DNA of 64,000 nt. Origin: Octopus bimaculoides. Taxonomy: Eukaryota. The position numbers and the translations under genes are program-made. The notes beneath the pieces are model-generated. The model saw only the letters and a program-made list of their open reading frames with translations. It ran no database searches and was not told the origin of the DNA. Each line of letters starts with the position of its first letter. Position 1 is the first letter of the stretch. Below are positions 3,980 to 35,900 of the stretch, one piece after another. The stretch is taken from the NCBI RefSeq assembly GCF_001194135.2, contig NC_068994.1, positions 17,786,766 to 17,850,765 of the forward strand, read 5' to 3'.

Positions 3980-4012
<33 letters not shown>

Positions 4013-5392: not shown

Positions 5393-5473
5393 CTGTAATT
5401 TCAGCAATGTTAGAAGAAATTTTTTCTGCAAATCCAATTCTTGTGTTTATTCCAGTACCAACGGCTGTGCCAC
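5393..5473 (-). CDS. FH: FH exon 7: (G)[26 protein letters not shown](G)
   Basis: Not in the ORF track; translated by hand. Conserved GGTAVGTG motif, acceptor aacaAG, donor GTAAAG, 81 bp, phase 1/1. Confidence 0.95.
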
Positions 5474-6091
5474 CTTGTTAAAATAATAAATTGCAGGTTA
5501 AAAAATGCTTATTGGATGAAATCAAAGCAAAGGTAGGTTAAGCTGTTACTTCTCCATATTCAGAAGTCACAGCTCCAGGACTTTGGACATGTTATTAGAA
5601 TGCAGCAGGAAAAAATCACAAGACAGATCATTCAAATTGAACCAACCAGCAGGAGACCTTGGGGTAGACCAAGAATGAAATGGTTGGATTATATTCATAG
5701 TCTCAGTTGGTCATACTTGGGAATCTAGCTGGAAAGTCTAATGATGATTGCTTCTGAGAGGACCCTATGGAGGAAGTGCCTGAAGACTACCCCAACAACT
5801 CTCCCAGGAATAGTGGACAGAGAAAATGGATCAATGTTTGCTTTAACCTCCAGTTCACATGAAGATAGATCTTTAAAAAAATCATTTGGAATATGCTAGA
5901 AATGGAAAAGACATACTAGAACATAAATGTGTGCAGTAACTTTTGTAGGATATTGATAATGTATGCAATGTATCATGTTAAGTAGAAGGTTGAAGAGCAA
6001 GAAGAAATCTCCAGTATCTGAATTACCTGTACTAACTTGGGGGAAAAATAGAGAAGCTTACTTAATTGAGATAAGCTACTCGTAAGTTTAG

Positions 6092-6311
6092 CCCTTTCGT
6101 TACTGTATTTATTTTGAGATGCTCTGTGTTTCTTTCAATTACTTTAAATATAACAAAGAATTTAGTAAAACAACTTAGTTATCATTCAGCTAGTGTTAGG
6201 AACATAAATTGTGACGAAAGTTTGGTGGAAAATTTTAATTGAAAACTTATGAAAACAAGACATTTGTATTCAGAACAAGAGCTAGTTTCAGCTGGGTTGG
6301 TAATGAAAGGG
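6092..6311 (-). mobile_element. piggyBac-type MITE, family 2
   Basis: CCCTTTC...GAAAGGG termini with TTAG (decayed TTAA) flanks; reverse complement of 45490-45712. Confidence 0.7.
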
Positions 6312-6399
6312 TTAGTCTGTAAGTAATTCTTGGTTGTACAGATTTCCCTTATATCACTAGTACCCTTCAGAAAAACAACAAATACTATCTTTGAGTATT

Positions 6400-8260
6400 T
6401 CACTTATGTAGGGTGAGCATTAGTTGCCTGGAGTCACTAAGAAGTTGATCTGGCTAGAAAGGCTAAATGGCTTGTCTCACTGCCACTGTATCTTTTGCAA
6501 AGGCACTTAACTTTCAATTTCTTTAGTGTGATACAGATAATAATTGAAAATGACGAAAACATTGAGTGTTTTCGTGAATTTAAATCACCTATGAACTGTC
6601 ATTGCTATCCATTTAGCACTGGCTGTTTCTAGATGCATGCACCATCACAAGAATCTGGTGAAATTATGATCAAATTATATTTAATGGCGTTTACATAATA
6701 CCCTGAGATTACTCTATCAATATCTTACATATTTCCCCATCCTTCATTGAACAACTTAATCCTAACTTTAGGAAAAAATGGTTGTGCCCATGAGAAAGCT
6801 TCTATCTTTATTTGATAAATCTGCTAAGAGTAGCAGCAAAGGTAAGTAAAATTGGAAATAAAAATATACCTATTGGCCTTCGTGCCGGTGACACGTAAAA
6901 GAACCCACTACACTCTCGGAGTGGTTGGTGTTAGGAAGGGCATCCAGCTGTAGAAACCCTGCCAAATCAGATTGGAGCCTGGTGTAGCCATTGGGTTTCA
7001 CCAGTCCTCAGTCAAATCATCCAACCCATGCTAGCATGGAAAGTAGATGTTAAACGATGATGATGATATTCTAATATCAGCATCAGTGTTGCTACTACTA
7101 ATAATAATTCTAATTATAATAACTATAGAATATAGTCCTAGATAAGTTGTGTTGGAACATAAGACAAGATGGTCACAGCAAAACTTCCTTCAATGATATG
7201 TATGCTTGATCAGAGCTGATCTGGATCTTAACCTTTTAATAAGTAGATAATTTTTTAAAACCCTTGTGACATAGGTAAATAATTTTTAGAAAATGTGTTC
7301 TAGTACTGCTCTATGGAGTGTGTTTTATGTATGAGTCACCATATTCAAAAATCAAACTGACAAATGCTCATAGTTTTTCAAGTGTCAACGGTTGCCAAAG
7401 AATTCTGGGATATTTTTGAAGTGGTCCTACATATCATATACAAGTGATTCCCAACATGGGGCATGAAATCCAAACTTTTTTACTTTTTCTTTTCTTATTT
7501 ATTTTTAATGGAACATGGAATTGTGAAAAATCTTTTTTTCACAGGTAACATATTACACTTATACTCAGCCTAGCCAAACCAATCCCTCCAGCCAAGCATA
7601 CTGTGTGAAGATTGTTTGCTACAGTATAGTGCTGTTCTAATGCCCTAGGGTGGATATTTCTTTAAGGAAAATACATAATTAGAAATATTTAAAATAAGGT
7701 TATTTTTTTTACTCACTACTAGTGGGGCATACATTTTTCTGGAAAGTTACAGCAGAGTGTTTTTGTGAAAATAGGTTGGGAAACGCTATATACAGCAGGT
7801 GAAATATATTTTTGGTTTCCTTCACAAGATAATCCCAAAGTAAAAACCCAGCACCAACAGAAGCCAAAAAGAATTATGAAAATAATCAACAGACGTAGTT
7901 TTAGTTAGTGTCTATCTAGGTCCACCATGGCTAACAAAATCATTTATAAGATGTGGGGTTTATCAGTTTTCAAGTCACATGTATCCAGCATCTGCATTGT
8001 CAGAAGTATCATCATCATGTAACTCCTTTCTACTACTAGATTCAGCTCTATTGTCTGCATACATACTCTCGTTATCTACATTACTTGCTCATGCATCATA
8101 TTTGCTATCTGAATCTTAAACATAGAACAAATTAAGATCATTTCCATTACCTAGGCTGTCATTGTTACTGTCCGACTCCTTGGAGATATCAAACATTTTC
8201 CTCTACACTGATTGAAGACCTCCTTTTAGCAAACAAACAATATGAACCACTGAGTACTAT
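6400..8260 (-). mobile_element. Possible highly decayed piggyBac-like transposase
   Basis: Minus strand at ~8200-7880 gives an acidic N-terminus-like stretch then GGP...TSVDYFHNSF, like the PGBD N-terminal motif. The rest is too degraded to align. Confidence 0.3.
6879..7067 (+). mobile_element. RTE LINE 3' tail with (GAT)n end
   Basis: Family sequence cacccactacactctcggagtggttgg...ccaacccatgctagcatggaaag..gttaaacgatgatgat; about ten copies in the window. Confidence 0.8.
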
Positions 8261-8655
8261 CATGTTGCTTTTGAGCATTTAAAGCTATAAATTATATAAC
8301 ATAATGATGTGAAAATCACTGGAATTCTATAGGAATGCATGGCTGCTTCAACAAATTAACATGCAATATTTGGTGGTGCCCCAGCATGGCCACAGTCAAA
8401 TTACTGAAACAAGTAAAAAGAAAAAAAAAATCAACCAGTAGGAGAATGCTTGACAATGAGCTATGAAAAAATGACCAAAATGTCCCTCTGTGTACCATTG
8501 GTGAATGAAATGTTCTACCTGCAAGAGAGTTAACAACAGAAAGAAGATACAAACTACTAAATGTTCAGTTATTACTGAATGATGATATTAATAAAAAATT
8601 TTTTTTTAAAGAGACTAACTTGAGCTATTGGAATTTATAAAGATATCTAACAAAC

Positions 8656-8767
8656 CTATGGCTAGCTGATATAATCTTGGCATAGTTGATTTGATGCGTT
8701 CAATTCCATTAGCTAACTGGGCTACATATCCACTAAACTCTTGTCCAAGTGTTAAGGGCACTGCATC
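8656..8767 (-). CDS. FH: FH exon 6: [37 protein letters not shown](G)
   Basis: Not in the ORF track; translated by hand. Conserved [14 protein letters not shown], acceptor ttttgcAG, donor GTTTGT, 112 bp, phase 0/1. Confidence 0.95.
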
Positions 8768-8967
8768 CTGCAAAATAGCATTTGAACAATAAAAACATCA
8801 TCATACAGCAAAATGTGTGTGTGTGTGTGCCTTCCTCCCTTTGATAAGGAGGGAGGAAAATAGGTGTAAAACAGTAAAGAAAGAAAAGATGTGTGAAAAT
8901 ACAAAAATGCTCAGCTCAAAATTAGTTGCAGTGAAATAGAGTGTGTGTATCAGCTTTATGTTTGGGG

Positions 8968-10085
8968 ATCCTTTCTGTTTGGCTTTCACTTTTCAATTCT
9001 TTTAATTTTGTTCCAATTGATTTCAAATTTTGTGTATTGATGTAGTTTTGTATGTTAATTATGGAAATGACATTTGTTTTTGCCATAAATTAATAAATAA
9101 AAAGTTAATAGATTTTTAAAGTGTGCAAATTTTGGGTAATTTTAGCCAATCGTAAGCCACAGACACATTGGTGCCTGTTTCCATAATAACAAGCCAAGAT
9201 GTTGTCTGCTTAAAGCTACTGTATCTATATTCTGAACTTTCATTTTTGAATTTTCACTACAAAAAAAGAGGATTGTTTTTTTCAAATTTGGTATATTGAT
9301 GTAATTTTTCATGCTGAATCCGATTTTGTTAATCATTTGTCGCAGAAAACTTTTTTTAGAAAAATGTTACCAATTGATTAACCCCAGATCATCCACTGGT
9401 CAAACTGACTCTAAACTCCAACCCTAAATCCTAACTCTAGTCCTAGAGTATCTCAAACTTTCGCTGTTAAATGTTTGCATGAACTAAGCTACAGTAGTGT
9501 AATGTGCAGTTTGTTTTTTAATTTTTTTGAAAAAAAAATTCATTGATCATTTTCCCTTTTTATATTTCCTGTTCCAACATTTTACTTGACTTTATTTAAA
9601 CTTATCAAAACTTCAAAACATATTACAACTTTCGTCATTGTAATTTATTGCTTCCCTGGCCGTTGCCAGTACTGTGGCATGTAAAACACCCACTACACTC
9701 TCAGAGTGGTTGGCATTAGGAAGAGCATCCAGCTGTAGAAACACTGCCAGATCAGATTAGAGCCTGGTGCAGCCATCCGGTTCACCAGTCCTCAGTCAAA
9801 TCGTCCAACCCATGCTAGCATGGAAAGTGGACGTTAAACGATGATGATGATGATTTTGTTTAATAAAAGTTATCTTGCAGAAAATGACTGCTTCTAAATG
9901 CTATTTTCTGATTGGGTAAAAATAATCAAACTTTAAACTGCTGTAACTTTTTTCAAAAATTTTTTCTGGAACAAGTGAATAACAACATCAGATTCAGTGT
10001 GAAAAAGTACATCAATGTACTAAATTAAAATTTTTTTTATTTAATTTTAAAATTTGAAAAAGTGAAAGCCAAATAGAAAAGAGTC
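8968..10085. mobile_element. Old DNA element with long imperfect terminal inverted repeats, containing telomere-like repeats and an RTE tail insertion
   Basis: 8968-9050 (ttggctttcacttttc...attgatgta) is the reverse complement of 10005-10085. Degenerate TAACCC-like units at ~9405-9445; RTE tail at 9660-9853. Confidence 0.45.
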
Positions 10086-10668
10086 ATGCTAAGGTGTTAG
10101 AGAATGAGAGAAGTGGCTGGAGCAGGGCAAGTTTCATGCTACAGAGGGGCTACATGGCACTCACATTTTGGAAGAGAGGTTGGGGGTGATCAGGTGGAGC
10201 TGGGAAGAGATAAAAAAAGCAGTGATAAGGTGTCTTTGTGGACCCTCAAAGTACAAAATGACTAAAAGTGAATGGGACAAAAGAACTGGAAGTATGGATG
10301 GGTAAAGGATGCATGAATGTTTGGGAGAATCAGAGATAGGGAATGGGTGAAGTGGTGACTATAATAAACAACAAATGTTGAGTGGATAAGTAGGAAAGGT
10401 GGAGAAGAGTAGGCTAGGGTTGAAAGGTGAATAAAAATGTGGAGTGATAAGTTCCAGAACAGATACAGGAGATATAGTAGACAGAGGAAGGATGAGAGAG
10501 AGATGATGAGTGGTTGGGTAGGTTGTGAGAGTGTGGGGCAGAAAGGGGCAGGTGTAACACATAGGGAGAGTGAGAAACATATAGTGGTAGAGAGGATGTG
10601 AGAATGGAGGACAGTATTAAGGATGAGGAACATATATCAAGGGAAACATTTCAGGGTAGTGGTATTAA

Positions 10669-11536
10669 CCCTTTCGTGTTCGGACAGGCCGAAAATAATT
10701 TCCCTTTATCTGTTTGAACCAGCTAAATCCCGCTGTATCTGATTCCTCTACAAAATCACTAAAAAATTAAACAAATCATGTTATTGAATTCTCGTTGTTT
10801 TGAGATAATGTGAGATAAAGCCTTTACCACCTTTATTCAAGTAAAAATACCCTGAAATTTTTGAGACTTCTTGATTTTTTTCAACATTTGAAGAGAAGTG
10901 TATATCTTAATTTTCAACGATATGGCATCAGCAAGTAGCAATTCTGACTTTGAAGGTTTTACTCTTAATGATGTACAAAATATAAATGCAAACAACTGTG
11001 ATTTGTCTTTGGACAAATCTGATATTGATATTTATGAATCTTCATTGGACGAGGAAAATTTTGATAATAAAAGTGATGAAAATTATATTGAAAACATTAC
11101 AGCAACATTATTGAAGATTATCACATCAACCACAGTTCCTGATTTCACAGAAAAGACTAGACCACAACACACTCTACCTCCCAATGTTCAACCATTGGAC
11201 TATTTATTTTTACTGAAGTTTTTTTTTTTTAACTACTGGAATCTTGATGTAAGGTATGGTGATCCATATATCTCCAGCATTATGCCTAACTATAGTCGAT
11301 TCATATACTGTTTATGTAAAAAGCCACCAAAAGACTACGACCATTTAAAATTTTGGGTTGACATCGCATCTCAGTTACGTGAGGGCTTTTCTTCCAGAAA
11401 ATACAGAACTGGGAGAAAAGCAAGATTAACTGAGGTGAACGTTAACAGAGAAAATATTGACTTCCATAAAGTGGAAAAAATAAATGGAATGAAAAAATTT
11501 TGTAGACTGTGTTTGCAAAACTGCAAAAAGATATAA
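10669..11536 (+). mobile_element. Internally deleted piggyBac element: left end plus truncated transposase ORF (ATG 10922)
   Basis: TTAA|CCCTTTCG left end. Acidic N-terminus and F.....P...LP....PLDY motif join directly to the C-terminal DHLKF.VDIASQL and CRLC segment. No DDD catalytic core. Confidence 0.75.
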
Positions 11537-11599
11537 GGTCAAGAACTCATAGTGCTTTCTGTGGTCCGACTCCATATTAAAATTTGTTTGAAATTTTAA

Positions 11600-11628
11600 G
11601 GTGTTTCCATTATTTTATCCAACCCCTG
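11600..11628 (-). mobile_element. Tc1-like terminal inverted repeat at a TA site next to an assembly gap
   Basis: Reverse complement reads TA|CAGGGGTTGGATAAAATAATGGAAACACC, a typical Tc1 terminus. Confidence 0.6.
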
Positions 11629-11784
11629 TATATNNNNNNNNNNNNNNNNNNNNNNNNNNNNNNNNNNNNNNNNNNNNNNNNNNNNNNNNNNNNNNNNNNN
11701 NNNNNNNNNNNNNNNNNNNNNNNNNNNNNNNNNNNNNNNNNNNNNNNNNNNNNNNNNNNNNNNNNNNNNNNNNNNNNNNNNNNN

Positions 11785-11816
<32 letters not shown>

Positions 11817-12072
11817 GTGTAATTGTCAAATATCACAAAACTTGCTAAACAATATCTGGACTTAAAAGACATATGCTAGTTCATAAAAACATTCCTTCAG
11901 ATTCAGATTCTAAAGGGCAAAGATGAATAATATCTGTCACTTGTGTCTTAAACCCTGTCAGTCAGGAGCTAGTCTTAAAAGCCATCTGAGGGCTCATCAA
12001 CAGAGGGATTGTGTTGTGCTGATGGGAAGGCTATCATCTGTCAAGATGAAGCAATCATCATATATATATATA

Positions 12073-12243
12073 TGATAGATCGCTGACCACTACACATATT
12101 TTTTTTCTCTCCTTGTTTCTTTCTGTTGAAGAGCGTAAGCTCGAAACATTAAAGACTTTCTCTATTCCTGAGCGTTATACTAATACATCCATTTGTTGTT
12201 TACACCACCTGTCTTCGTCTGTTGTTTTTTCGTGAATTCTCCT
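12073..12243 (+). mobile_element. Penelope-like pseudo-LTR fragment in a (TA)n tract, with a minimal type I hammerhead-like motif (12118-12155)
   Basis: TCTTT-CTGTTGAA-GAGC GTAA GCTC-GAAA-CATT-AAAGA: helix I, variant core, 4-bp helix II, very short helix III. Confidence 0.55.
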
Positions 12244-12299
12244 ATATATATATAACAGAGTATTGTAGTTTGCTTGAAGCATTGTGTATTGTTTGTAAA

Positions 12300-12495
12300 G
12301 AATAAAACGTTTTGAATGGTACAACAATGCACTATAATACAAAAAAATGGATTATATAATTGTTGTAATTTAGTTATCTATAGTCCGATGATCTGAAGAA
12401 GGAATTGTATTTCGAAATAGATAACTAAATTACAAGTATATAGTCCATTTTTTTGTATTATAGTGCATTGTTGTACCATTCAAAACTTTTTATTC
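12300..12495 (+). ncRNA. Type III hammerhead-like core (12371-12427) closed by an ~80-bp inverted repeat
   Basis: Arms 12300-12381 and 12417-12495 are reverse complements (3 mismatches, one 3-nt indel). Between them: AUA | GTC CGAT GAT | CTGAAGAA | GGAA TTGTA TTTC | GAAA. Confidence 0.6.
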
Positions 12496-12548
12496 TTTAT
12501 ATATATATATGCAATGTACATGGATAAAATTATTGGTATATAACTTAC

Positions 12549-12704
12549 TTGCGTGTGTGTACGTCCTACTTTGATAATGTCCATAAACTCATTAGATTTG
12601 TTTTTGAGAGATTCATGTAATTTATGAAGGGCAGGTAATAAATGCTGGTGGATTTCAGCAGCAACAGCTATGTGCATTGCAGTCGGAAATGTATCATTGG
12701 AACT
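12549..12704 (-). CDS. FH: FH exon 5: [52 protein letters not shown]
   Basis: Conserved SSNDTFPT and GRTH (catalytic His). Acceptor ttacAG, donor GTAAGT, 156 bp, phase 0/0. Confidence 0.97.
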
Positions 12705-12875
12705 CTGTAATACATGAATAAACAATTAATTGTCACAATGTAAGATATAGAAAGGACAATAAACATGCTTGATCACAAAACATAAGCGAATGACCCCAAT
12801 ATCAAAGCTCTTGAGTTGTTTTTCTCAGAGTGACATGTAACATGTAAACACATTGAAGACCGGTGTGGCATTTAA

Positions 12876-13094
12876 CACTTTAGCATTCAGATTATCCAGT
12901 CAAACGTAATGCTTTTACATTCACATTGCTTTCAATTAATCAGGCATTATTTTGTGACTTCGAAATTTTGATGATATGGTTGTATATTTTACAATTGCAT
13001 TAAAGAGTAAGTGTGATAGGCTGGATCTGGTTGGTTGGAGTATAACACAGGTAGAACATTTGGGACAGATATAGCCAGTTTAAATGCTAAAGGG
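12876..13094 (+). mobile_element. piggyBac-type MITE, family 1
   Basis: (C)CCTTTAGCATT...AATGCTAAAGGG termini with TTAA flanks; other copies at 16266, 24625, 25940, 45346 and 49583. Confidence 0.75.
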
Positions 13095-13273
13095 TTAAGC
13101 AAATAAATAAGAATATAAAAAATATGGAAGTCTCTTCTTGACCGGTTTTCTTGTATTTAGTACCTTATACAGGAACACTTGATTAAAAGATATTTTTCTT
13201 TTTGTTAGATTATGAGAAAATTACATCAATTAGAAAAAGAATGGTTAAATTGTTGGTTGGTTATTGTATAGAT

Positions 13274-13517
13274 CAGCAGTTCTCAATCATTTTTTACCAA
13301 TGGACTCCTTTGATTCCTATTTTACTCGGGTGGACTCTCCCAGCAATTCAATGTTTAAAAAATGATATTTTTATAATTAAATATTATTAGGAATTGTTTA
13401 AAAAAAAAAAATATTTTGTGAATTGTGAAAGTATAACAAATTTATTGCAAATAAATTTAACAAAATCTTATATGGACCCCACCCAAGGGCCATATGGACC
13501 CTGGTTGAAAACCACTG
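13274..13517. mobile_element. hAT (Charlie-like) MITE
   Basis: TIRs CAGCAGTTCTCAA / TTGAAAACCACTG and a perfect 8-bp TSD GTATAGAT; an inverted relative lies at 48792-49030. Confidence 0.85.
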
Positions 13518-13558
13518 GTATAGATTATGAATTCATATTTTCAAATTTTTTTTTTATT

Positions 13559-14010
13559 CCATCATCATCATTTAACATCCACCTTCCATGCTAGCAAGGG
13601 TTGGACGATTTGACTGAGGACTGGCGAACCAGGCTCCAATTTGATCTGGCAGAGTTTCTACAGCTGGATGCCCTACCTAACGCCAACCACTCCAAGAGTC
13701 TAGTGGGTGCTTTTACGTTCCACCGGCACGAGGGCCAGTCAGGCGGTACTGGCAACGGCCACGCTCAAAATGGTGTTTTTTACGTGCCACCTGCATAAGA
13801 GCCAGTCCAGCGGCACTGACAACAACCTCGCACGAATGTCTTTTCACGTTCCACCGGCACAAGTGCCAGGAAGGCAACGCTGGTAACGATCACGCTCAAA
13901 TGGTGCTATTTACGTGCCACTGGCATGGAAGCCAGACAGCTGCTCTGGCAATGATCACGCTCGGACAGTGCTCTTAGCGCGCTCCTCTGGCACAGGTGCC
14001 AGTCATCGAA
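13559..14010 (-). mobile_element. RTE LINE 3' end with ~65-bp internal tandem repeats
   Basis: (CAT)n start on plus, the family tail, then 4-5 diverged units of ggtgc(t)tttacgtgccaccggcac... Confidence 0.75.
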
Positions 14011-14594
14011 TTTGGTTCAATCATGATTTCGAAAAAAACATTTTCTATGTCTGTTCTAGATAGAGCTGTGAGTCCTCATTGCTGGTATTTAATTGAGTTT
14101 TAAACATTACTCTATAAAGGTATAGTCTTGACTGTGTGATTAAGAAGCTTACTTTACAACCACATGGTTTTAGATTCAGTCCTGCTACACAGCACCTCTT
14201 CTAATATAGACACAAACCAACCAATGACATGTGGAAGAATTTAGTAGATGGTAACTGTGTGGAAGTCTGTTGTGTGTGTGTGCTGAGTGGTTTTCAGTTC
14301 ATGATCATAAGGACATGAGTTCAATTCCAGTGGCACGTTATGTCCTCCAGTAAGACACTTTATTTCACGTTACCCCAGTCCACTCAGTTGACAAAAATGA
14401 GTTGTACTTGTAATTCAAAGAGCCAGCTTTGTCACTTTCTGTGTCACGCTGAATCTCCCTGGAAATACGTGAAGGGTATACATGTCTGTAGAGTGCTCAA
14501 CTATTTGCACGTTAATTTCATGAGCAAACTGTTCCGTTGATTGGATCAACTGGAACCCTCATTGTCATAACCACTGGAGTGCCAGTTTATATAT

Positions 14595-14910
14595 CATCAT
14601 CATCATTTAACATCCGTTTTTTCATGCTGGCATGGGTTGGATAGTTTGACTGAGGACTGGAAAGTCAGCGGCTGCACCAGTCTCCAACCTGATCTGGCAA
14701 TGTTTCGACAGTTGGATGCCCTTCCTAGTGCCAATCACTCTGAGAGTATAGTGGATGCTTTTTATGTGCCTTCGGCACAGGAGCCGGTCAGGTGGGCCTG
14801 GCATTGGCCATGTTCGGATGGTGCTTTTTATGTGTCACCGCCATGGGAACCAGTCAGGCGACCCTGGCATCAATCACATTTGGATGGTGCTTTTAACATG
14901 CCACCAGCAC
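14595..14910 (-). mobile_element. RTE LINE 3' end
   Basis: Same family as 13559-14010; (CAT)n terminus. Confidence 0.7.
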
Positions 14911-14913
14911 ACG

Positions 14914-14961
<48 letters not shown>

Positions 14962-16265
14962 TACACACACAAATACATACACTGTATTGAGACCCCTCTA
15001 GCAAGTAGTGTGGAGCAACTCTTTGGACCTTGTACTGTATTTTGCCCAGATGCTCAAGAGCACAGGGAGAAGGCTAATACAAGTGGAGACATGACAGGGC
15101 ATTGCAGAAATCACAAAGTGGACTTAACTGCAAAGGGTGAGGACCAGACTATTAGATGTTGTTATGCACCACTGGTCACAGTGTGCTTCCTTACACTGTT
15201 TTGTCTTTTGAAGATGGTTTATTACACTGACTTCAGTACAAGACTGGTACTTTATCAATGCCAAAAGGATGAAAAACAAAATCAGCCCTGAATATAGAGA
15301 GCCAGAACAAATATTGGTTTCAATTTTGGCACAGGGCCAGTAATTTTAGGGGACATTTTGCTACCATCTCTATCCTGCTGTCTCTCACTCACTCTCTCCT
15401 TCTCCTGCACTTTCCTCAGGTTGGGTAACCATGTATCTCCTTTGTGGAAGCACACCTGTTTCTGTCTTTATTCCTGATATCTCTACAGCAAGACACCTCT
15501 ACACCTTCCTCTACAGCAAGGCACCTGTGTCTGTCTCTCTGTCTCACTATAACCTTTCATCATCCAACACAAAACCACCTCCTCCAATAACCCCTCCCCT
15601 CTTGAAAGTTTTATTTTTTTTTTTGTCTTGCAAGTAATTGGTGACCCTGTCAGTGTAGGTGCCACTTAAAAGCATCCAGTCCACACTGTAAATTGGTTGG
15701 TGTTTGGAAAGGCATCCAGCTGTAAAAACCTTGCCAAAACTGACCTCACCAGTGCTTGTGCCACGTAAAATGATGTACTAAGTCCACTCTGCTGAGTCGT
15801 TAGTGTTAGGAAGGGCACCCAACTGTAAAAATCCTGCCAAAATAGTCACAGAAGTCTGGTGCAGGCTTCTCCCTAGCTGGCTCTTGTCAAACCATCCCAC
15901 TCAAGCTAGCATGGAAGGCAGATTTTAAATGATGATGATGAGGAGGAATGTCTATTTATAACCAAAGTAATTGCCTATTGTATTTCCAAAACAGATAATT
16001 CTCAACAGTTTGATGGCTGCCAAAAAAGTGTTGCCTGTCACAACATATACCTACAATAAAGTGCTTACTTGTGGATGATGAAAGTGAATCTCAAAGTAAT
16101 AATAGGTTTTAATCAGGGAAACAAGTGGAGGACCATACAAAAAGCCTGCACTTAAAACATGTGTGTGTGTGTGTGTGTGTGTACTGTTTATTTATTATTC
16201 ATTATATAAAAGCATTGGAAATAAGGTTAGATGCCATCATCTAATTAGAAAAAAAAAAGATTTGA

Positions 16266-16484
16266 CCCTTGAGCATTCAGATTATTCTGCCAAATGTAAT
16301 GCTTATTTATTCACATTAAAAAAAAATTAATAATGCATTATCTTGCAGCTTTGAGATTTCAATGATGTGACTATATTTTTACAATGACATTGTTAGGTAT
16401 TGTGGGGAGCCAGATCTGACCACTTTAAACATAAAACATGTAGAAAATTTTGGGCCAGATACGGCCAGTTTAAATACTAAAGGG
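16266..16484 (+). mobile_element. piggyBac-type MITE, family 1
   Basis: Similar to 12876-13094; right end AAAGGG|TTAA. Confidence 0.7.
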
Positions 16485-16745
16485 TTAATTTACTGCAAGA
16501 TTAATTTATTTCAAGATGTTTTAATTTGATTCAAGTTTACTTTAACTTCCTTTAAGTTTATTTTAATTTGTACTTGAAAAAGGTGTCAATGCTTTAAATT
16601 ATCCTGTTTATATTTATATTTCTGCATGGAAAAATAATGTGAGGATATCTTATTTTTTGTTCTTCTGGAAGGTCAATAGGTACCAGTAAAAGACAAACTC
16701 TTGCTCCAACTCTCTTCACAAAAAAAAAAAAAAAAAATCTACCTA

Positions 16746-17152
16746 GGCGCAGGAGTGGCTGTGTGGTAAGTAGCTTGCTTATCAAACACATGGTTCCGGG
16801 TTCAGTCCCACTGCGTGGCACCTTGGGCAAGTGTCTTCTACTATAGCCTTGGGCCGACCAAAGCCTTGTGAGTGGATTTGGTAGACGGAAACTGAAAGAA
16901 GCCCGTCGTATATATGTATATATATATATGCGTATGTGTGTCTGTGTTTGTCCCCCCAACATCGCTTGACAACGGATGCTGGTGTGTTTACGTCCCCGTC
17001 ACTTAGCGGTTTCACAAAAGAGACCGATAGAATAAGTACTAGGCTTACAAAGAATAAGTCCTGGGGTCGATTTGCTCGAGTAAAGGCGGTGCTCCAGCAT
17101 GGCCGCAGTCAAATTATTGAAACAAGTAAAAGAATAAAAGAGAGTAAAGAGA
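16746..17152 (+). mobile_element. tRNA-derived SINE, family A (young copy), abutting the FH exon 4 donor
   Basis: Pol III A-box-like TGGCTGTGTGGT and B-box-like GGTTCAGTCCC, central (TA)/(TG) microsatellite, (GTAAAAGA)-type tail; near-identical to 51039-51488 and 63742-64000. Confidence 0.85.
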
Positions 17153-17173
17153 GATAAGATAAATGACACTTAC

Positions 17174-17350
17174 TTGGCTCATATTTACATGATCATTTGG
17201 ATGCACAGGGTCCTTGCTGCCAAGCTGACCACCAAGTAACTGAATGGCTCGGTTGCTAATCACTTCATTGACATTCATATTTGTCTGTGTGCCAGAACCT
17301 GTCTGCCACACGACAAGAGGGAAATGGTCCATAAGTTCACCAGAACTCAC
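17174..17350 (-). CDS. FH: FH exon 4: [59 protein letters not shown]
   Basis: Conserved [17 protein letters not shown] and HPNDHVN. Acceptor ttcAG, donor GTAAGT, 177 bp, phase 0/0. Confidence 0.97.
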
Positions 17351-18139
17351 CTGAACAGAAATAAAGAAAAATGAAATCAAACATTAGATTAACTAAAAAA
17401 AATGGCCTATTGTATGTGTGTGTGTCTACGCATGCAAGTGCAAGTAAATATGGCTAAATGGAGAAACCTTGGATTGGATTGGACTGCCCATGTTCAGTCC
17501 ACTGCAAGATGAGGGCCTCAGCATGTTCTCTCCATCAATCATGGTCTGATGTAGAGGCCATGAATTTTAGCTTGAGATCATACTGGTTTGATGAGCCTAC
17601 CCTGCCACACTGGCTTGACAGAGAGATGCAGTTTTTTTCTTTTATTCATATACAGGGGTAGTTAAGTCAATTACATCCACCCCAGTGCTCAACTGGTATT
17701 TATTTTATTGACTCTGAATAGAAGAAAGGCAAAGTCAATCTCAATAGAATTTGAACTCATAATGTAAAGATGGTCAAAATGCTACTAAGCATTTCACCTG
17801 GCATGCTAACGATTCTGCCAGCTCGTTGCCTTACAGCCTTACATATACATAACTATGACTAGTGTAGTTAGACTGAGAAATATTTGTTGTTTTTTTACCT
17901 TCCTTCCTAGTGTCATGTTAAAGGTAGATTATTGTTGGAGATCCAATCCCTGGGTATTCCTTATTAAACTTCTCATGACAAGATATGATATAGATATTAA
18001 CAATGAAGAAGATGACAAACACATAATTAATATTCATGACACAGTTTTTGAAAAGATGAGGTACTCTGTTTTAATTTTGTAATGTGAAGAAACATGTATT
18101 ATATTGCTAACTGCACTTAAGTAGTAAAAGTAATAATAA

Positions 18140-18635
18140 TAATAATAATAATCCTTTCTACCATAAGTACAAGGCCTGAAATTTTGGGGATGGGGGCTAG
18201 TCGATTACATCAATTCCAGTGTGTAACTGGAAGTCAATTACATCGACCCCAGTGTTTCACTGGTACTTATTTTATTGACACTGAAAGGAAGAAAGGCAAA
18301 GTCAACGTCGGCAGGATTTGAACTCAAAATGTGAAGATAGATGAAATGCTGTTAAGCATTTTGCCCAGTGTGGTAACGATTCTTCCAGCCCGCCACCATA
18401 ATAATAATAATAATAATAACAATCCTTTCTACTAAAGGCACAAGGCCTGAAATATTGAGGGTGGGGGATTGTCGTTCACATTGACCCTAGTGATTCACTG
18501 GTACTTAATTTATCAACCCTGAAAGGATGAAAGGCAAAGTTGACCATGGCAGTATTTGAACTCAGAACATAGTGATGAGCAAAATGCCGCTAAGCATTTT
18601 GCCCAGCATGTTAATAATTCTGCCAGCTCGCTGCC

Positions 18636-18680
<45 letters not shown>
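18140..18680 (-). mobile_element. Tandem tRNA-derived SINEs, family B, separated by (TAA)n
   Basis: Repeated unit aatcctttcta...aggcctgaaa...gaaaggcaaagtc...atttgaactc...ctgccagctcg; minus strand carries the tRNA-like head and (ATT)n tail. Confidence 0.8.
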
Positions 18681-19313
18681 GATAAAAGATTTTAAAAAAT
18701 GAAGGCAAGTTGAATTTTAGTCACATGTAAAAGAGAATATTTTAAAGAATGAATAAATTAGTTTTGATAAGTTTCATGCCCATTTAACCATTCAGAGAAA
18801 TATCAAAACTTAAAAAAACACACACACTTTTAACAGTTACTTTCAATTGTGGTAGACTCACCTGTCATAGATGACAGATTAGGGCTTTGCAATTTCTTGC
18901 TGAACAATTTGTTCCACAGATGATTTGTTTCTGTTGATTAAATGTTTGTGTTGTACATTAGCTCACTTCTGTCATCAAATCAACATTGCCCAATACAAGT
19001 GTATAGTAATGCCACATGTCAAATGTTAAAGTGATCGCAGAGCAAGATGAAAAGAAGTGTTTTGCTCAAGAATACAATGCACTACCCAGTCCAGTCTGGG
19101 AATCAAAACCACAATCTTGCAATCATGAGTGCAACACCTCAACCACCAGGCCATGCATTTTCACAACTTTCAATTTGAGAATAGAAAATTCTTGATTCTA
19201 TTCAAGAATTATATCTTTTGCACTATTTTCAAATGTATATAATTGGTTACATGGTGTCATCACTAGGTAAATAAACTATGTCCTAATGACCAAATACAAC
19301 AAAGCTAACATAC

Positions 19314-19424
19314 TTCCATGGCAGCAGATTTTATTACTTCAGCTATTTTGGGATCCAGGTCATACTCTTGATTCACTTGGGCTGCTGCAGCCTTCAGAAT
19401 ACCAAAAGCTTTGATAAGTGGAAC
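19314..19424 (-). CDS. FH: FH exon 3: [37 protein letters not shown]
   Basis: Not in the ORF track; translated by hand. Matches fumarase [12 protein letters not shown]. Acceptor ttgcAG, donor GTATGT, 111 bp, phase 0/0. Confidence 0.95.
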
Positions 19425-23602: not shown

Positions 23603-23731
23603 CGGCATTTTTTCAGTTTCACCACCAATGTTGAAATTGATCAAAGTGCGTGCCGTGACAGCTCCATAGAGTTTGTCATTTGGGACTGGCACAGGCCCCA
23701 AACTGTCAGTCTCCAATCTTGAAGCTCCAGG
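23603..23731 (-). CDS. FH: FH exon 2: PGASRLETDSLGPVPVPNDKLYGAVTARTLINFNIGGETEKMP
   Basis: Matches the mature fumarase N-terminus (R.E.D..G...VP.DK.YGA.T.R...NF.IGG..E.MP). Acceptor ttttcAG, donor GTATGT, 129 bp, phase 0/0. Confidence 0.95.
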
Positions 23732-32577: not shown

Positions 32578-32835
32578 TTAAAAAGAAATAAAGAAAATAT
32601 ATACCAGAAGAACTAAATTTCGATCCCGTATCCTTCGTCGAAATCCGGCATTCATCTTACGATTTTGAACCGTGTCCGAAATCAAAGCTTCTTGAGATTT
32701 CCAGCGCCGAATATTTTTCCTATGTACACCACATTCCCTAGCAGTTTTAGCTACGTTTCCATTGTTTTCACGAAGCATTTTAAGGACACTGTTTTTAAAC
32801 ATCAACGGATAGCTTTTTCGTTTATCGTCAGCCAT
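32578..32835 (-). CDS. Intact short ORF encoding a Brinker/pogo-type helix-turn-helix DNA-binding domain (MADDKRKSYPLMFKNSVLKMLRENNGNVAKTARECGVHRKNIRRWKSQEALISDTVQN...)
   Basis: Pattern RKSY...FK..VL......N...TAR..GVHRKNIRRW resembles the Drosophila Brinker and POGK N-terminal DBD. No stop or frameshift. 85 aa if unspliced; possible phase-0 donor CTG|GTATAT after 32605. Confidence 0.75.
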   Translation of the reverse strand: MADDKRKSYPLMFKNSVLKMLRENNGNVAKTARECGVHRKNIRRWKSQEALISDTVQNRKMNAGFRRRIRDRNLVLLVYIFFISF

Positions 32836-32969
32836 GTTGAATAAATAAACAAATATATATATATATGTAGATACATACAAACATACACACACGCAGACGT
32901 ATATTAAATATATGTGTTTATGTTTGTGTCTCTACTGTGTATGCGTTAAACACAATATCGATCTCTCAG

Positions 32970-32978
32970 CTGATTGGC
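32970..32978 (-). promoter_or_regulatory. CCAAT box (GCCAATCAG) ~135 bp upstream of the Brinker-domain ATG
   Basis: Plus-strand CTGATTGGC is a good NF-Y consensus match, in CpG-rich sequence. Confidence 0.45.
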
Positions 32979-35900
32979 CGCTTAAAAGAAAGATTTCAAA
33001 TAGATTTATAGCAGAAAATAATCTTTACATTCAGAAATAGAAGTGTGGAGTTTATATTTTTTTCGTGTACAGAACAGTGAAAAACAAAGGAAAATAAACT
33101 GTTTAGTACTAATCACGATTACATAGTAGAAACAAGTTCGTGTCCAGCTTTCCACTTTAATTACATCGCTAATGCCCTTGAGAAAAGCATGACCGTCTTG
33201 CTAGCTTATTACCCGCACCTCTCTCTCGGGACTGTATCTGTTTGAGAAAACATTAAGACGAACAAAACATTCGTGCAATAGCTTCAGTGGTGAAAAAAAA
33301 ATTAAGACAATAAATTGTTTTCATCAAATAAGATATTCTTAATATGCATTTCTGATCTTCACATGGACGAGTCAAAAGGGTAGACATGGCCGAGCGCTCG
33401 GCTAAAATACCTTGTAGTATTTAGTTTCGACCCTTTACGTTCTGAATTCAAATCATTCAGGACATGACTGACTTTAATTCCCCTGTAGCAAATAAATAGC
33501 TTTACTGAGAATCGATTGAAGCGACTTTAAGCAATCCTTCTCTACCATCTCTGGCCTTGTGATAATGTTAGACATCACATATGACAAGTGTCGTTGCAGA
33601 GCGAGTTTTAAAAATCAGTCGCAGACCCGGTTTGGATTCTCAGATGACGTGACATAAGTAAAGTTCGCTTCAGTTGGTCCGTTTCGGGTGCTACTCACAC
33701 CTCCAAGTCTTAATGTTGGAGGGTGGTAAGTGTAGTTGAAACAGTGAAGTACCGTACTTCAGTTCAAATGCTGCTAAGACAAGGATCAAGAAAACAAGCA
33801 CATATAATAATAATAATATACTAGAGTAAATTAAATGACCAACTCTCTCCCTCTCTCTCTTACAAAGGTTAGCTTTGCGACCCAGTCCAAATGTATGTTT
33901 CATTCACCCAGGTCGGGCAACTTGCCCGGACCAATGTTAACTCTACCATGCCAAACGTCTCGATCGAGCCATGAAGCATGAATGTCTGCCTATCTAACTT
34001 CGGTTTCAGACACACTGGTCTTTCGCTAGCAGAAACATCTTATTTCCTCATGACACGACTATACATGCAAGCTGTAGTTCGCTAACTGAAATGGTTGATC
34101 CTGACTGTTGACAGTTTGTAGCCTGTTCATCCACTTAGTAATGTAGATAATATTCGCCATTGACACAACAAGTTCATTTGCCGAAATAGATAACAACCAC
34201 CTGGTAGTTTACGTGTTATATTTAACCCATAGCCAGGACTCTGGCAGGTGCTTCTAATCTGGGTCGGAATAGACCTGTGAATAATAGTGGCTCCACACGC
34301 CTCAAAACCCTGCAACTCCCGAACCAGGATCCCATTACTAGATACAGTTTAATGTCATCCCCATAACTTCTAAATTTGACAAAAAACATCGGTATCAATA
34401 ATCGGCCCATGAAATAATACGTATTAGGATATGAGGACTAAAGATGTATTACATAAGGAGGTTGTTCGAGGCCTTACTTTCTGAGTTCAAATCTTCACTA
34501 TGGCTAATGGTATAAGTGCCAATAACATATTGCTGTCGGTAATATTCCATTCTTCTACATAATAAATGAGTCTTGTGATACGGCAAAATAAGTTTTGTAA
34601 GGTCACCGATATTTATAAGGTGTAATAACAGACTAGATAAAGACATTTTTTTTTAAATGGAAAAAAAAAATACCTAAATAGGCAGTGGCAAATTAACCTC
34701 GCTTATGATTTTGGAATTCTCACATTTAAGGCAATCCCAAACCGAACATTAAAGGATTTCTGCGGCTATACACATACACAGCTGAAAATGAGTTCCAACC
34801 AAGTGCTGGTACATCTTTCCAATCACTAGCTGTCACATCCACGATGCTACGTCGGGTTAAGAGACTGAGGTCCGAGAAGGTGTATGTGTGACATGTAAAA
34901 AGGATCTCCGTCGCTTAACTAAGTGCTCACTGAATTAGATTCAAAGTGACTGAGTATTATTCAACAGACACGTGTAACTCAATGCAATCTTTAAGCAGAA
35001 CCAGCTTCACACAGTGTATGATAAAGCTGGACTCTTAAATTGCATGTGCAATCCATCTGGTAGGTCCTGCACAGTTTTTACCTGTATTCACTGTCATTTA
35101 CAAAGCTTGGTTCGATCCAAAGCTATGATGAAAGCGAACCTCTGAATCTTTTGAGCACCTACGTGCGTGCGTGCCTGCGCGCATATGTATGTATGTATGT
35201 ATGTATGCATGCATGTATGTATGCGCGTGTCGCATATATGTTAAAATAGTTATTTAAAAACGCTTTTAAGATCAACAACTGAACTTACGGTGTGATTCTT
35301 AAATGAGAGTTGAGCTAAATTTATTGTGAGGATCTGGGACTTCAAGTTATGCATATTGGTTTGTTCAACTAGTGGTTGAAGGAGCCGGTAGGCGAAACAG
35401 GAAGTGCCAGTCCCACTGCGTGATATCTTGGGCAAGTGTCTTCTATTATAGCCAGTGTTGATTTGTTGACATCCCCGTAACTAAACGGTTCGACAAGAAG
35501 TAACCAACAGAATAAGTACCAGGTTTTAAAAAAAGGTACTGGAGTCGATGTGTTCGACTAAACCCTTCAAGGCAGTGCCCCAGCATGGCCGCAGTCCAAT
35601 GACTGAAATATGTAAAAGATAAAAGATATGTGTGTGTACACATACATACACAACCACATATTTAACGGCGAATGTTTATATATGTTGGTTTCTTGAGTTA
35701 ATACCATTACGTGTCGTGGATAAGGCGGCGAGCAGGCAGAATCGTCAACACGNNNNNNNNNNNNNNNNNNNNNNNNNNNNNNNNNNNNNNNNNNNNNNNN
35801 NNNNNNNNNNNNNNNNNNNNNNNNNNNNNNNNNNNNNNNNNNNNNNNNNNNNNNNNNNNNNNNNNNNNNNNNNNNNNNNNNNNNNNNNNNNNNNNNNNNN

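What the first reader, a model, noticed from the sequence alone, without database searches (positions are those of the whole stretch)
32578..32980. Intact Brinker/pogo HTH ORF upstream of FH, possibly an alternative FH first exon or a domesticated mini-gene
Seen: an unbroken ORF with a Brinker-type HTH and a basic tail (RKMNAGFRRRIRDR), with a CCAAT box ~135 bp upstream, on the FH strand. I found no TIRs, CENP-B HTH or DDE domain nearby, whereas the other transposon ORF remnants in the window are broken or truncated. After 77 codons the sequence is CTG|GTATAT, a phase-0 donor identical to that of the candidate FH exon 1, and FH exon 2 starts in phase 0. Established: fumarase has a nuclear role in the DNA-damage response in yeast and mammals, and pogo DBDs are often domesticated. 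Inference (speculative): splicing 32605 to 23731 would give a DNA-binding fumarase of ~541 aa. Alternatives are an 85-aa unspliced protein, or a 97-aa protein using an AG at 32197 (EGPAKVMGHDNNFLQTKLQK*).
Basis: partly seen in the sequence, partly recalled or inferred. Interest (0 to 1): 0.7.

Follow-up and report, generated by a model that had tools for sequence, protein, structure and literature searches.

The report
Transposon-derived DNA-binding first exon of octopus fumarase
Inside the first intron of the octopus fumarase gene lies a small exon taken from an old "pogo" transposon; it has been kept intact in Octopus and Argonauta, and public gene models splice it onto fumarase in place of the mitochondrial signal, predicting a DNA-binding version of this metabolic enzyme.

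Summary
On the minus strand, ATG 32835 opens 77 codons followed by CTG|GTATAT, with a read-through stop at 32578. The ORF passes Pfam's BrkDBD cut-off, and a CCAAT box lies about 140 nt upstream.

The window is the Octopus bimaculoides FH locus. The ORF is not upstream of FH. The canonical targeting-signal exon is at 63075-62968, so the ORF lies in sense inside the roughly 39 kb intron 1.

The predicted 541-aa fusion already exists as RefSeq isoform X1 (XP_014786186.1). Identical-architecture models exist in O. sinensis and O. vulgaris.

New evidence here:
- The exon is syntenic and intact in O. vulgaris, O. sinensis and Argonauta hians, and absent from the cuttlefish locus.
- dN/dS against Argonauta is 0.07, and pN (0.052) equals that of the FH catalytic exons (0.050).
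- Conservation stops at the donor, and the read-through tails differ between species.
- A 23-nt CCAAT block is invariant.
- The nearest relatives are N-termini of pogo-type transposases. Homology ends where their second HTH starts, and no DDE domain or TIRs remain.

Verdict: a domesticated transposase DNA-binding exon used as an alternative FH first exon, and a new member of the host-transposase fusion class. Transcripts, nuclear localisation and DNA binding were not tested here.

The parts
32957..32979 (-). Conserved promoter-like block GGCCAATCAGCTGAGAGATCGAT. It contains the CCAAT box at 32977-32973, which fits the NF-Y consensus RRCCAATSR as I know it.
   Evidence: 23 of 23 nt are identical between O. 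bimaculoides, O. vulgaris and Argonauta hians, while the surrounding intron cannot be aligned with Argonauta. The AG just upstream (32982-32981) is CGG in Argonauta, so it is not a conserved acceptor.
32836..32956 (-). Leader between the CCAAT block and the ATG; the transcription start is not mapped. It contains (TG)n and (TA)n tracts and the conserved pre-ATG motif TATTTGTTTATTTATTCAAC.
   Evidence: Over 32980-32836 there is 1 substitution and a 2-nt indel in 145 nt between O. bimaculoides and O. vulgaris. Argonauta has about 100 nt more here but keeps the roughly 25 nt before the ATG, and has an in-frame stop (TAA) three codons before the ATG.
32605..32835 (-). Coding part of the alternative first exon, 77 codons. 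It holds a BrkDBD/psq-type three-helix HTH (helices 11-23, 28-35, 39-47) and a basic helical linker (49-76, RKMNAGFRRRIRDR). It derives from the N-terminus of a pogo-type transposase.
   Evidence: Pfam BrkDBD 29.3 bits. AF2 mean pLDDT 89, with the best PDB fold match 2GLO Brinker (TM 0.80 normalised to the target, rmsd 1.7 A) and then CENP-B 1HLV. Identity to transposase N-termini carrying HTH_Tnp_Tc5 is 45-55%. The amino-acid sequence is 100% identical in O. vulgaris and O. sinensis and 89.6% identical in Argonauta, with dN/dS 0.068.
32599..32604 (-). 5' splice donor GTATAT, phase 0.
   Evidence: GTAT is conserved in Argonauta (ATG|GTATTT), and conservation ends here. This junction is used in the RefSeq X1 models, because the protein reads ...NLVLL|PGASR.
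32578..32604 (-). Read-through tail VYIFFISF plus stop. It is intronic and not conserved.
   Evidence: The tails are 8 aa in O. bimaculoides, 43 aa in O. vulgaris and O. sinensis (a 1-nt indel) and 26 aa in Argonauta.
62968..63075 (-). Canonical FH exon 1 (coding part), MFHCTTLHRIATKSIGVRLTFFCLQRFSRDKFYSNM. By position it is the presumed mitochondrial targeting signal of isoform X2. Isoform X1 uses the HTH exon in its place.
   Evidence: 100% tblastn match of the N-terminus of XP_014786187.1. It is a collinear conserved island in Argonauta.
23603..23731 (-). FH exon 2 (PGASRLETD...EKMP), the common acceptor for both first exons, in phase 0.
   Evidence: The acceptor and phase are conserved in Argonauta (tttcag|CCTGGT).
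558..19424 (-). FH exons 3-9: 19424-19314, 17350-17174, 12704-12549, 8767-8656, 5473-5393, 4882-4679, 982-558 (the last includes the stop).
   Evidence: All junctions are AG/GT and the translation is identical to the FH part of P0161 and P0162.

Best explanation
The ORF is the coding part of an octopod-conserved alternative first exon of the fumarate hydratase gene. It was exapted from the 5' end of a pogo-type DNA transposon that landed in sense orientation in FH intron 1. Only the first HTH and the basic inter-HTH linker of the transposase survive.

The exon appears to have its own promoter, marked by an invariant CCAAT block, and its own ATG. Its phase-0 donor (32604) joins the phase-0 acceptor of FH exon 2 (23731). 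The 77-aa HTH module therefore replaces the 36-aa targeting-signal exon, giving a 541-aa protein: HTH, linker, then the complete catalytic fumarase.

Shown here:
- the exon anatomy;
- the transposase ancestry of the domain;
- synteny in four octopod genomes;
- protein-level purifying selection as strong as on the enzyme itself;
- conservation of the donor, acceptor and phase;
- the existence of the fusion in public gene models.

Inferred, not shown: the isoform lacks a mitochondrial signal and so stays in the cytosol or nucleus. The HTH and basic linker then tether the fumarase tetramer to DNA. That would be a hard-wired version of the nuclear fumarase 'echoform', which in yeast and human is recruited to DNA breaks and acts through local fumarate (review PMC6068284).
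For: (1) The fusion is already modelled. P0162 = XP_014786186.1 (O. bimaculoides isoform X1, 541 aa) reads MADDKRK...NLVLL|PGASRLETD..., and P0281 = XP_029644594.1 / CAI9733076.1 (O. sinensis / O. vulgaris) has the same architecture.

(2) Synteny. The HTH exon lies between FH exon 1 and exon 2 in L003 (35666-35896), L004 and L005 (Argonauta, 16036-16266). It is absent from the cuttlefish FH locus L006.

(3) Selection.
- O. bimaculoides against O. vulgaris: 2 substitutions in the 376-nt exon against 101 in 1556 nt of flank, Fisher p = 6e-8.
- Against Argonauta: 34 nt differences but only 8 amino-acid differences, dN 0.054, dS 0.80, dN/dS 0.068. None of 100,000 random placements of 34 substitutions gave 8 or fewer changes without a stop.
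- pN is 0.052, against 0.050 for FH exons 2-9.
- All 8 amino-acid changes lie outside helices 2-3.

(4) The only collinear conserved islands between O. bimaculoides and Argonauta are FH exons 1-9 and this exon.

(5) Conservation ends at the GT donor, and the read-through tails differ in every lineage. The exon 2 acceptor and phase are conserved.

(6) The CCAAT block is invariant, while the upstream AG is not conserved. In Argonauta a stop lies 3 codons before the ATG. The exon is therefore a first exon, not a cassette exon.

(7) Ancestry. The best relatives carry BrkDBD + HTH_Tnp_Tc5. L001 and L002 hold frameshifted copies that are homologous to P0086 from the first HTH through its last residues, a stretch Pfam does not recognise as DDE. 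Homology of the octopus exon stops at residue 72, where HTH2 begins in the relatives.
Against: - No transcript, junction read or peptide was examined here. RefSeq X models are predictions, and chimeric transposon-FH models do occur: the Alligator sinensis FH model P0272 carries RT_RNaseH domains.
- The Argonauta hians annotation does not include the fusion; its longest product is 465 aa.
- The O. vulgaris protein is identical to the O. sinensis one and may not be an independent prediction.
- The AlphaFold model of the whole fusion left residues 1-78 below pLDDT 50, probably because of a poor mixed alignment. It says nothing about how the HTH sits on the enzyme. The FH core starts only about 3 residues after the junction.
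- DNA binding, nuclear localisation and any role in DNA repair or chromatin are inference only.
- A single psq-type HTH usually binds DNA weakly on its own. Brinker is the known exception (my knowledge).
Confidence: 0.75

Rival explanations
1. The conserved ORF is a stand-alone mini-gene. It would encode a small HTH protein of about 77 aa plus a variable tail, from an intronic transcript that is not spliced to FH or is spliced to something else. The FH fusion models would then be annotation artefacts.
For: The ORF has its own ATG and a promoter-like CCAAT block. A stop follows the donor within 8-43 codons in every species. The Argonauta annotation lacks the fusion. Many database relatives are short HTH-only ORFs.
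Against: Amino-acid and nucleotide conservation stop exactly at a conserved GT, and the tails differ in length and sequence even between close Octopus species. No other conserved island exists between this exon and FH exon 2 in Argonauta. The in-frame, phase-0 compatibility with exon 2 is kept in Argonauta. The gene models of O. bimaculoides and O. sinensis both join it to exon 2.
Confidence: 0.13
2. The exon is conserved for a non-coding reason. It would act as an internal promoter and 5' leader that produces a fumarase mRNA without the targeting signal, or as an intronic enhancer, with the HTH reading frame incidental.
For: The non-coding part of the exon and the CCAAT block are also highly conserved. 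Synonymous sites in the exon are less diverged than in the FH exons (pS 0.49 against 0.75, p = 6e-4), which hints at extra nucleotide-level constraint. In human, dual localisation of FH uses alternative transcription initiation (Dik et al. 2016, cited in PMC6068284).
Against: Of the 34 differences from Argonauta, 24.5 are synonymous and 9.5 non-synonymous, on 50 and 181 sites respectively. There is no stop and no indel in 231 nt. That pattern is protein-level constraint, which a purely regulatory element does not produce. In the fusion no downstream in-frame ATG would be used first: exon 2 starts PGAS, and the M that precedes it belongs to exon 1.
Confidence: 0.07
3. It is a neutral transposon relic that happens to keep an open frame.
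For: It is a short ORF in AT-rich, repeat-rich intron DNA. Other transposon fragments in the window are decayed, for example the ORFs at 25373-25800, which from memory resemble a LINE ORF2 tail (Pfam gave no support).
Against: Fisher p = 6e-8 for exon against flank divergence. dN/dS is 0.07 at a distance where the FH synonymous sites are saturated and the intron cannot be aligned.
Confidence: 0.02

Closest known systems
Host-transposase fusion genes formed by capture of a transposase DNA-binding domain through alternative splicing (Cosby et al., bioRxiv 10.1101/2020.05.07.082677; examples include KRABINER, SETMAR and POGK)
   Same: A DNA-transposon DNA-binding domain is used as an exon of a host gene. 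It is joined in frame through the host's own splice acceptor and coexists with the ancestral isoform. It is under purifying selection and syntenic across species.
   Different: The host partner is a TCA-cycle enzyme (class II fumarase), not a KRAB, SCAN, BTB or other regulatory domain. The captured piece supplies the first exon, promoter and ATG rather than a 3' exon. Only HTH1 and the linker of the bipartite pogo DNA-binding domain are kept. The lineage is octopods, not tetrapods.
Brinker / Pipsqueak-type HTH (Pfam BrkDBD PF09607; PDB 2GLO) and the CENP-B N-terminal domain (PDB 1HLV)
   Same: The score is above Pfam's cut-off. The predicted three-helix fold superposes on 2GLO (rmsd 1.7 A) and on CENP-B domain 1 (rmsd 1.4 A). 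The motif T-A-R-x(5)-[HD]-R-x-x-[IV]-x-x-W is conserved.
   Different: It is not an orthologue of Brinker. Identity to Brinker-like proteins is 30-40%, against 45-55% to transposase N-termini. It is a single copy of the domain fused to an enzyme.
pogo/Tigger-type (Tc1/mariner superfamily) transposases
   Same: The N-terminal HTH1 and the basic linker align with proteins that continue into HTH_Tnp_Tc5. For P0086, L001 and L002 the homology continues further, into what I take from memory to be the start of the DDE domain; Pfam does not confirm this.
   Different: There is no HTH2, no DDE domain and no TIRs. It is single-copy per locus, fixed and syntenic. It is a derivative, not a mobile element.
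[quoted passage not shown]
   Same: One FH gene gives one product with the mitochondrial signal and one without. In human this is achieved by alternative transcription initiation.
   Different: In octopods the isoform without the signal would carry an added DNA-binding module. In yeast and human, recruitment to DNA is by phosphorylation and protein contacts, not by an intrinsic DNA-binding domain. The function in octopus is untested.

Membership tests
BrkDBD / psq-type HTH domain (Pfam PF09607) | Sequence scores above the curated Pfam gathering threshold | tested here: met
   29.3 bits against 23.4 for the 85-aa ORF, and 25.4 bits within the 541-aa fusion. PDB sequence search: Brinker 2GLO, E = 0.0017.
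BrkDBD / psq-type HTH domain (Pfam PF09607) | Three-helix HTH fold superposable on a solved member | tested here: met
   AF2 mean pLDDT 89.1. The top Foldseek hit is 2GLO: prob 1.00, TM (normalised to the target) 0.80, rmsd 1.7 A over 56 columns. 1HLV CENP-B gives rmsd 1.4 A. This rests on a predicted model, and the Foldseek E-values are weak (0.04) because the domain is short.
BrkDBD / psq-type HTH domain (Pfam PF09607) | Binds DNA | not testable with these tools
   Needs EMSA, DAP-seq or ChIP.
pogo/Tigger-type transposon (autonomous element) | Second HTH (HTH_Tnp_Tc5 / CENP-B domain 2) after HTH1 | tested here: not met
   No PF03221 match in the three minus-strand frames of 28900-33500. Homology to relatives stops at residue 72, where their HTH2 begins.
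pogo/Tigger-type transposon (autonomous element) | DDE_1 catalytic domain | tested here: not met
   No Pfam match. tblastn of 150 relatives, including P0086 which runs on past its second HTH, hits only 32931-32599.
pogo/Tigger-type transposon (autonomous element) | Terminal inverted repeats and TA target-site duplication | tested here: not met
   Only (TA)n self-complementarity within 31650-34200. Given the age of the insertion, decayed TIRs would not be recognisable.
pogo/Tigger-type transposon (autonomous element) | Multiple dispersed copies in the genome | not testable with these tools
   There is one copy in the 64-kb window and one per FH locus in L003-L005. No whole octopus genome could be searched.
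Host-transposase fusion gene | Transposase-derived domain and host domain in one open reading frame of a gene model | tested here: met
   P0162 and P0281 carry BrkDBD + Lyase_1 + FumaraseC_C. The window reproduces the 541-aa ORF exactly.
Host-transposase fusion gene | Purifying selection on the transposase-derived part, and syntenic orthologues | tested here: met
   dN/dS 0.068 against Argonauta. pN equals that of the FH exons. Syntenic in 4 octopod genomes.
Host-transposase fusion gene | Fusion transcript and protein observed | not testable with these tools
   No RNA-seq, Iso-Seq or proteome data could be reached. The only evidence is the existence of isoform models in public annotations.
Class II fumarase (FH) | Lyase_1 and FumaraseC_C domains, with orthology to metazoan FH | tested here: met
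   Lyase_1 387 bits and FumaraseC_C 93 bits. Identity to metazoan FH is 70-80%.

The most novel reading that the evidence does not exclude
Octopods have turned fumarase into a sequence-specific chromatin factor. The isoform lacks the mitochondrial signal, and as a homotetramer it would display four pogo-derived HTH modules. It would bind dispersed sites, possibly relics of the cognate pogo family's terminal repeats. There it would set the local fumarate/malate ratio and so modulate 2-oxoglutarate-dependent histone or DNA demethylases, or DNA-break repair, at defined loci. That would be a metabolic enzyme recruited to DNA by a domesticated transposase domain rather than by signalling.
Probability: 0.25. 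Interest if true: 0.85.

Novelty: new member of a known kind. Interest (0 to 1): 0.62.

Why it matters
Fumarase is the textbook case of a mitochondrial enzyme with a second role in the nucleus, in the DNA-damage response and as a tumour suppressor. How it gets to DNA, and what it does there, is still debated.

An isoform in which evolution bolted a DNA-binding domain onto the complete enzyme, and then kept it under selection as tight as on the catalytic core across a deep octopod split, is a natural experiment. It argues that placing fumarase on DNA is itself advantageous.

It also extends transposase capture in two ways: from tetrapod transcription factors to a lophotrochozoan, and from regulatory host domains to a core metabolic enzyme. 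It shows a route in which the transposon supplies the promoter, the ATG and the donor site of a new first exon.

In practice it is easy to test, because the junction, the junction peptide and the domain boundaries are now defined.

Tried and rejected
- Word-indexed protein search with the 85-aa ORF found nothing, because the query was too short for the index. The exhaustive phmmer search was needed instead.
- Translating the region through the Pfam tool failed on stop codons. I redid it with stops masked.
It is not used in RefSeq X2, there is no conserved island in Argonauta, and a 4-nt deletion shifts the frame in O. vulgaris.
It lies in the most diverged bin of the flank and is not conserved in Argonauta.
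- The cassette-exon idea (acceptor ttttaag|C at 32981) is rejected. The AG is CGG in Argonauta, the exon-1 frame would hit TGA after 4 codons, and Argonauta has a stop 3 codons before the ATG.
- A Pfam scan of the three frames of L001 (the closest relative's locus) gave no hits. Homology of its downstream part to P0086 was shown by tblastn instead. A DDE_1 assignment for that family therefore rests on that similarity and on my reading of the MDE(T/V)P.YFD motif, not on Pfam.
- AlphaFold of the whole 541-aa fusion left the N-terminus unmodelled, with pLDDT about 30. It is uninformative.
- The organism of L001 and L002 could not be identified. They share no repeats with the cephalopod loci.
- I found no divergence date for Argonauta and Octopus in the argonaut genome paper, so I give none.
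- Literature searches for the accessions or for an FH-transposase fusion found nothing.
Full report
**1. What is at the coordinates**

- On the minus strand an ATG at 32835 opens an 85-codon ORF that ends with the stop at 32578.
- The first 77 codons (32835-32605) are followed by GTATAT. Read-through then adds VYIFFISF and a stop.
- Pfam places residues 6-50 in BrkDBD (29.3 bits, cut-off 23.4) and also in HTH_Tnp_1 (27.9 bits, cut-off 24.1).
- A CCAAT lies at 32977-32973.
- The ORF is unique in the window.
- No second HTH or DDE domain is detectable in the three minus-strand frames of 28900-33500. tblastn of 150 relatives against the whole window also finds none.
- The only inverted repeats nearby are (TA)n tracts.

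**2. Where it really lies**

I located the FH exons with a remembered human FH sequence as a tblastn probe and then read the splice sites. This gives exons 2-9 on the minus strand from 23731 to 558.

A database search with the assembled protein identified the window as Octopus bimaculoides. It returned two RefSeq isoforms:
- X2 (XP_014786187.1, 500 aa) begins MFHCTTLHRIATKSIGVRLTFFCLQRFSRDKFYSNM. That exon is at 63075-62968 in the window.
- X1 (XP_014786186.1, 541 aa) begins with the 77 residues of the HTH ORF joined directly to PGASRLETD... of exon 2.

So the ORF is not upstream of FH. It sits in sense orientation inside the roughly 39-kb first intron, about 30 kb downstream of the canonical first exon and 9 kb upstream of exon 2.

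O. sinensis (XP_029644594.1) and O. vulgaris (CAI9733076.1) have a 541-aa model with the same architecture.

It is frameshifted by a 4-nt deletion in O. vulgaris.

**3. Is it a real, selected exon or a modelling artefact?**

I fetched four FH loci: O. vulgaris (L003), O. sinensis (L004), Argonauta hians (L005) and the cuttlefish Acanthosepion pharaonis (L006).

The HTH ORF is present between exon 1 and exon 2 in all three octopods and absent from the cuttlefish locus.

*O. bimaculoides against O. vulgaris*
- Introns are about 88-93% identical.
- The interval 32980-32605 has 2 substitutions in 376 nt, against 101 in 1556 nt of immediate flank (Fisher p = 6e-8).
- The 231 coding nucleotides differ at one synonymous site.

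*O. bimaculoides against Argonauta*
- The intron is no longer alignable.
- The only collinear islands are FH exons 1-9 and this exon (324 nt, 84% identity, the second-highest bit score after the last exon).
- The 77 codons have 34 nucleotide differences but only 8 amino-acid differences, with no stop and no indel. dN is 0.054, dS 0.80 and dN/dS 0.068.
- None of 100,000 random placements of 34 substitutions did as well.
- The non-synonymous divergence (pN 0.052) is the same as that of the catalytic FH exons 2-9 (pN 0.050).
- The eight replacements (positions 5, 12, 20, 25, 59, 60, 76, 77) all lie outside helices 2 and 3 of the HTH.

This is protein-level purifying selection. A neutral relic is excluded.

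**4. What the exon is joined to**

- Conservation ends exactly at the GT (CTG|GTATAT in Octopus, ATG|GTATTT in Argonauta).
- The read-through tails are 8, 43 and 26 residues in the three lineages and are unrelated in sequence.
- The exon-2 acceptor and its phase 0 are conserved in Argonauta.
- There is no other conserved island between the HTH exon and exon 2.

The only conserved partner is therefore FH exon 2, as in the RefSeq models. I could not inspect RNA-seq, so the junction itself rests on those models plus the evolutionary footprint.

From my own knowledge, alternative isoforms in NCBI's Gnomon pipeline, and in the original genome annotation behind UniProt A0A0L8FWU6, normally derive from transcript alignments. 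I could not verify that here. One caution is that transposon-FH chimeras do appear among RefSeq models, for example an Alligator sinensis FH with RT_RNaseH domains.

**5. First exon or cassette exon?**

In Octopus a pyrimidine tract and an AG precede 32980. In Argonauta that AG is CGG. By contrast, the adjacent 23-nt block GGCCAATCAGCTGAGAGATCGAT is identical in all species. From my own knowledge, GGCCAATCAG fits the NF-Y consensus (RRCCAATSR).

In Argonauta an in-frame stop lies three codons before the ATG. In Octopus, reading in from exon 1 would hit TGA after four codons.

The exon therefore behaves as an alternative first exon with its own promoter and start codon. The transcription start was not mapped.

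**6. Origin**

Exhaustive phmmer against 1.84 billion representatives gave 178 hits.
- The closest hits (45-55% identity) are short ORFs and N-termini that continue, in the same frame, into HTH_Tnp_Tc5 (P0019, P0086, P0098, P0151, P0152).
- The loci of P0003 and P0151 (L001, L002) contain frameshifted copies that match P0086 from HTH1 through HTH2 to its last residues, across frameshifts and stops.
- Pfam does not call a DDE domain in P0086 or in the L001 frames. My reading of the MDE(T/V)P.YFD stretch as the start of a DDE domain is from memory.
- Brinker-like proteins with several BrkDBD copies are more distant (30-40% identity).
- Homology of the octopus exon ends at residue 72 (…RRRIRDRN), exactly where the relatives begin their second HTH (YP.LE…).

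The "basic tail" is therefore the inter-HTH linker of a pogo-type transposase. What was captured is HTH1 plus that linker.

AlphaFold models the 77 residues with pLDDT 89 as three short helices plus a long helix (49-76). The best structural match in the PDB is the Brinker DNA-binding domain bound to DNA (2GLO; TM 0.80 normalised to the target, rmsd 1.7 A), followed among the close matches by CENP-B domain 1 (1HLV, rmsd 1.4 A).

**7. Likely mode of action**

Shown: the fusion replaces only the 36-aa exon-1 peptide and keeps the whole enzyme. In the model the first beta-strand of FH starts 3-4 residues after the junction.

Inferred, in three steps:
- Without the presequence the isoform is not imported into mitochondria.
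- The KRK and RRRIRDR clusters may act as nuclear localisation signals.
- The HTH tethers the fumarase tetramer to DNA.

This would hard-wire what yeast and human cells achieve by recruiting the fumarase echoform that lacks the targeting signal to DNA breaks, where fumarate acts on KDM2B or Sae2 (review PMC6068284). None of this was tested.

The AlphaFold model of the full fusion was uninformative for the N-terminus.

**8. Comparison with the known, and novelty**

Mechanistically this is a host-transposase fusion of the kind catalogued in tetrapods. Cosby et al. (bioRxiv 10.1101/2020.05.07.082677) found at least 94 independent captures, mostly through alternative splicing and mostly onto KRAB-type regulatory domains.

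It differs in three respects:
- the host is a TCA-cycle enzyme;
- the transposon supplies the 5' exon, the promoter and the ATG;
- the lineage is octopods.

It is not a transposon, because HTH2, the DDE domain and TIRs are absent.

A survey of transposon-derived transcription factors that included O. bimaculoides does not list this protein in its supplements (PMC10027918). Full-text searches for the accessions or for an FH-transposase fusion returned nothing.

The protein model is public, but the domestication, its conservation and its meaning appear undescribed. I rate it a new member of a known kind, with interest of about 0.6. It would rate higher if DNA binding and a nuclear function are confirmed.

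Noticed in passing
L005:9890-10003 (Argonauta hians FH exon 1): The exon homologous to the Octopus targeting-signal exon has an in-frame TGA (…FHRIA*KSIG…) and a frameshift before …FSRDKFYSNM. The Argonauta annotation starts FH at the last M (465 aa, no presequence). This is either an assembly error or a real change in how Argonauta makes mitochondrial FH.
   Followed up: partly
window 30577-30642 (-): The ORF MLFVVRRMHRARKALCILSCHL followed by CTG|GTATAT looks like a presequence exon, but it is frameshifted by a 4-nt deletion in O. vulgaris and is not conserved in Argonauta. It is a chance ORF, and the shared 9-mer with the HTH donor is not significant (14 of 100 shuffles).
   Followed up: yes
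window 32981-33579 (-): The 600 nt upstream of the HTH exon are less diverged between O. bimaculoides and O. vulgaris (3.8%) than the 1 kb downstream (8.1%). This may reflect promoter or enhancer constraint around the alternative first exon.
   Followed up: partly
window 32605-32835 vs L005:16036-16266: Synonymous sites of the HTH exon are less diverged from Argonauta (pS 0.49) than those of FH exons 2-9 (pS 0.75, saturated; p = 6e-4). FH GC3 rose from 0.30 in Octopus to 0.57 in Argonauta, but in the HTH exon it rose only from 0.34 to 0.42. This could mean extra nucleotide-level constraint or a different mutational context.
   Followed up: partly
window 25373-25800 (-): Two adjacent ORFs (…LHGSETWAMT…RQLHWYGHVLHMDED… and …GRGRPRKTWDEVVKHDL…) resemble, from memory, the C-terminal tail of a non-LTR retrotransposon ORF2. 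Pfam gave no significant match. The orthologous region in O. vulgaris is about 86% identical, consistent with neutral evolution.
   Followed up: partly
window 56204-56387, 9674-9854, 6882-7067; L005:16848-16997 and 17662-17811: A dispersed repeat of about 180 nt (SINE-like) has many copies in the Octopus loci and recognisable copies (70-75% identity) in the Argonauta FH intron 1. No tRNA-like head was found by ARAGORN in the window.
   Followed up: no
window 42960-43810, 39830-40190, 18130-18660, 17664-17835: Another repeat family occurs in short tandem clusters (units of about 230 nt) in several FH introns. It is also present in L003 and L004.
   Followed up: no
window 11634-11784, 31539-31628, 35753-35974, 37147-37617: Four assembly gaps (runs of N). 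One of them (31539-31628) is about 1 kb downstream of the HTH exon.
   Followed up: no
P0272 (Alligator sinensis FH, 623 aa): This RefSeq FH model carries RT_RNaseH domains, so it is another transposon-FH chimera among gene models. It shows that such models can arise without being functional, and it was not examined further.
   Followed up: no
L003-L006, downstream of FH: A convergently oriented SET-domain gene (with zf-MYND in the cuttlefish, SMYD-like) follows FH in all four cephalopod loci, so synteny is conserved.
   Followed up: no
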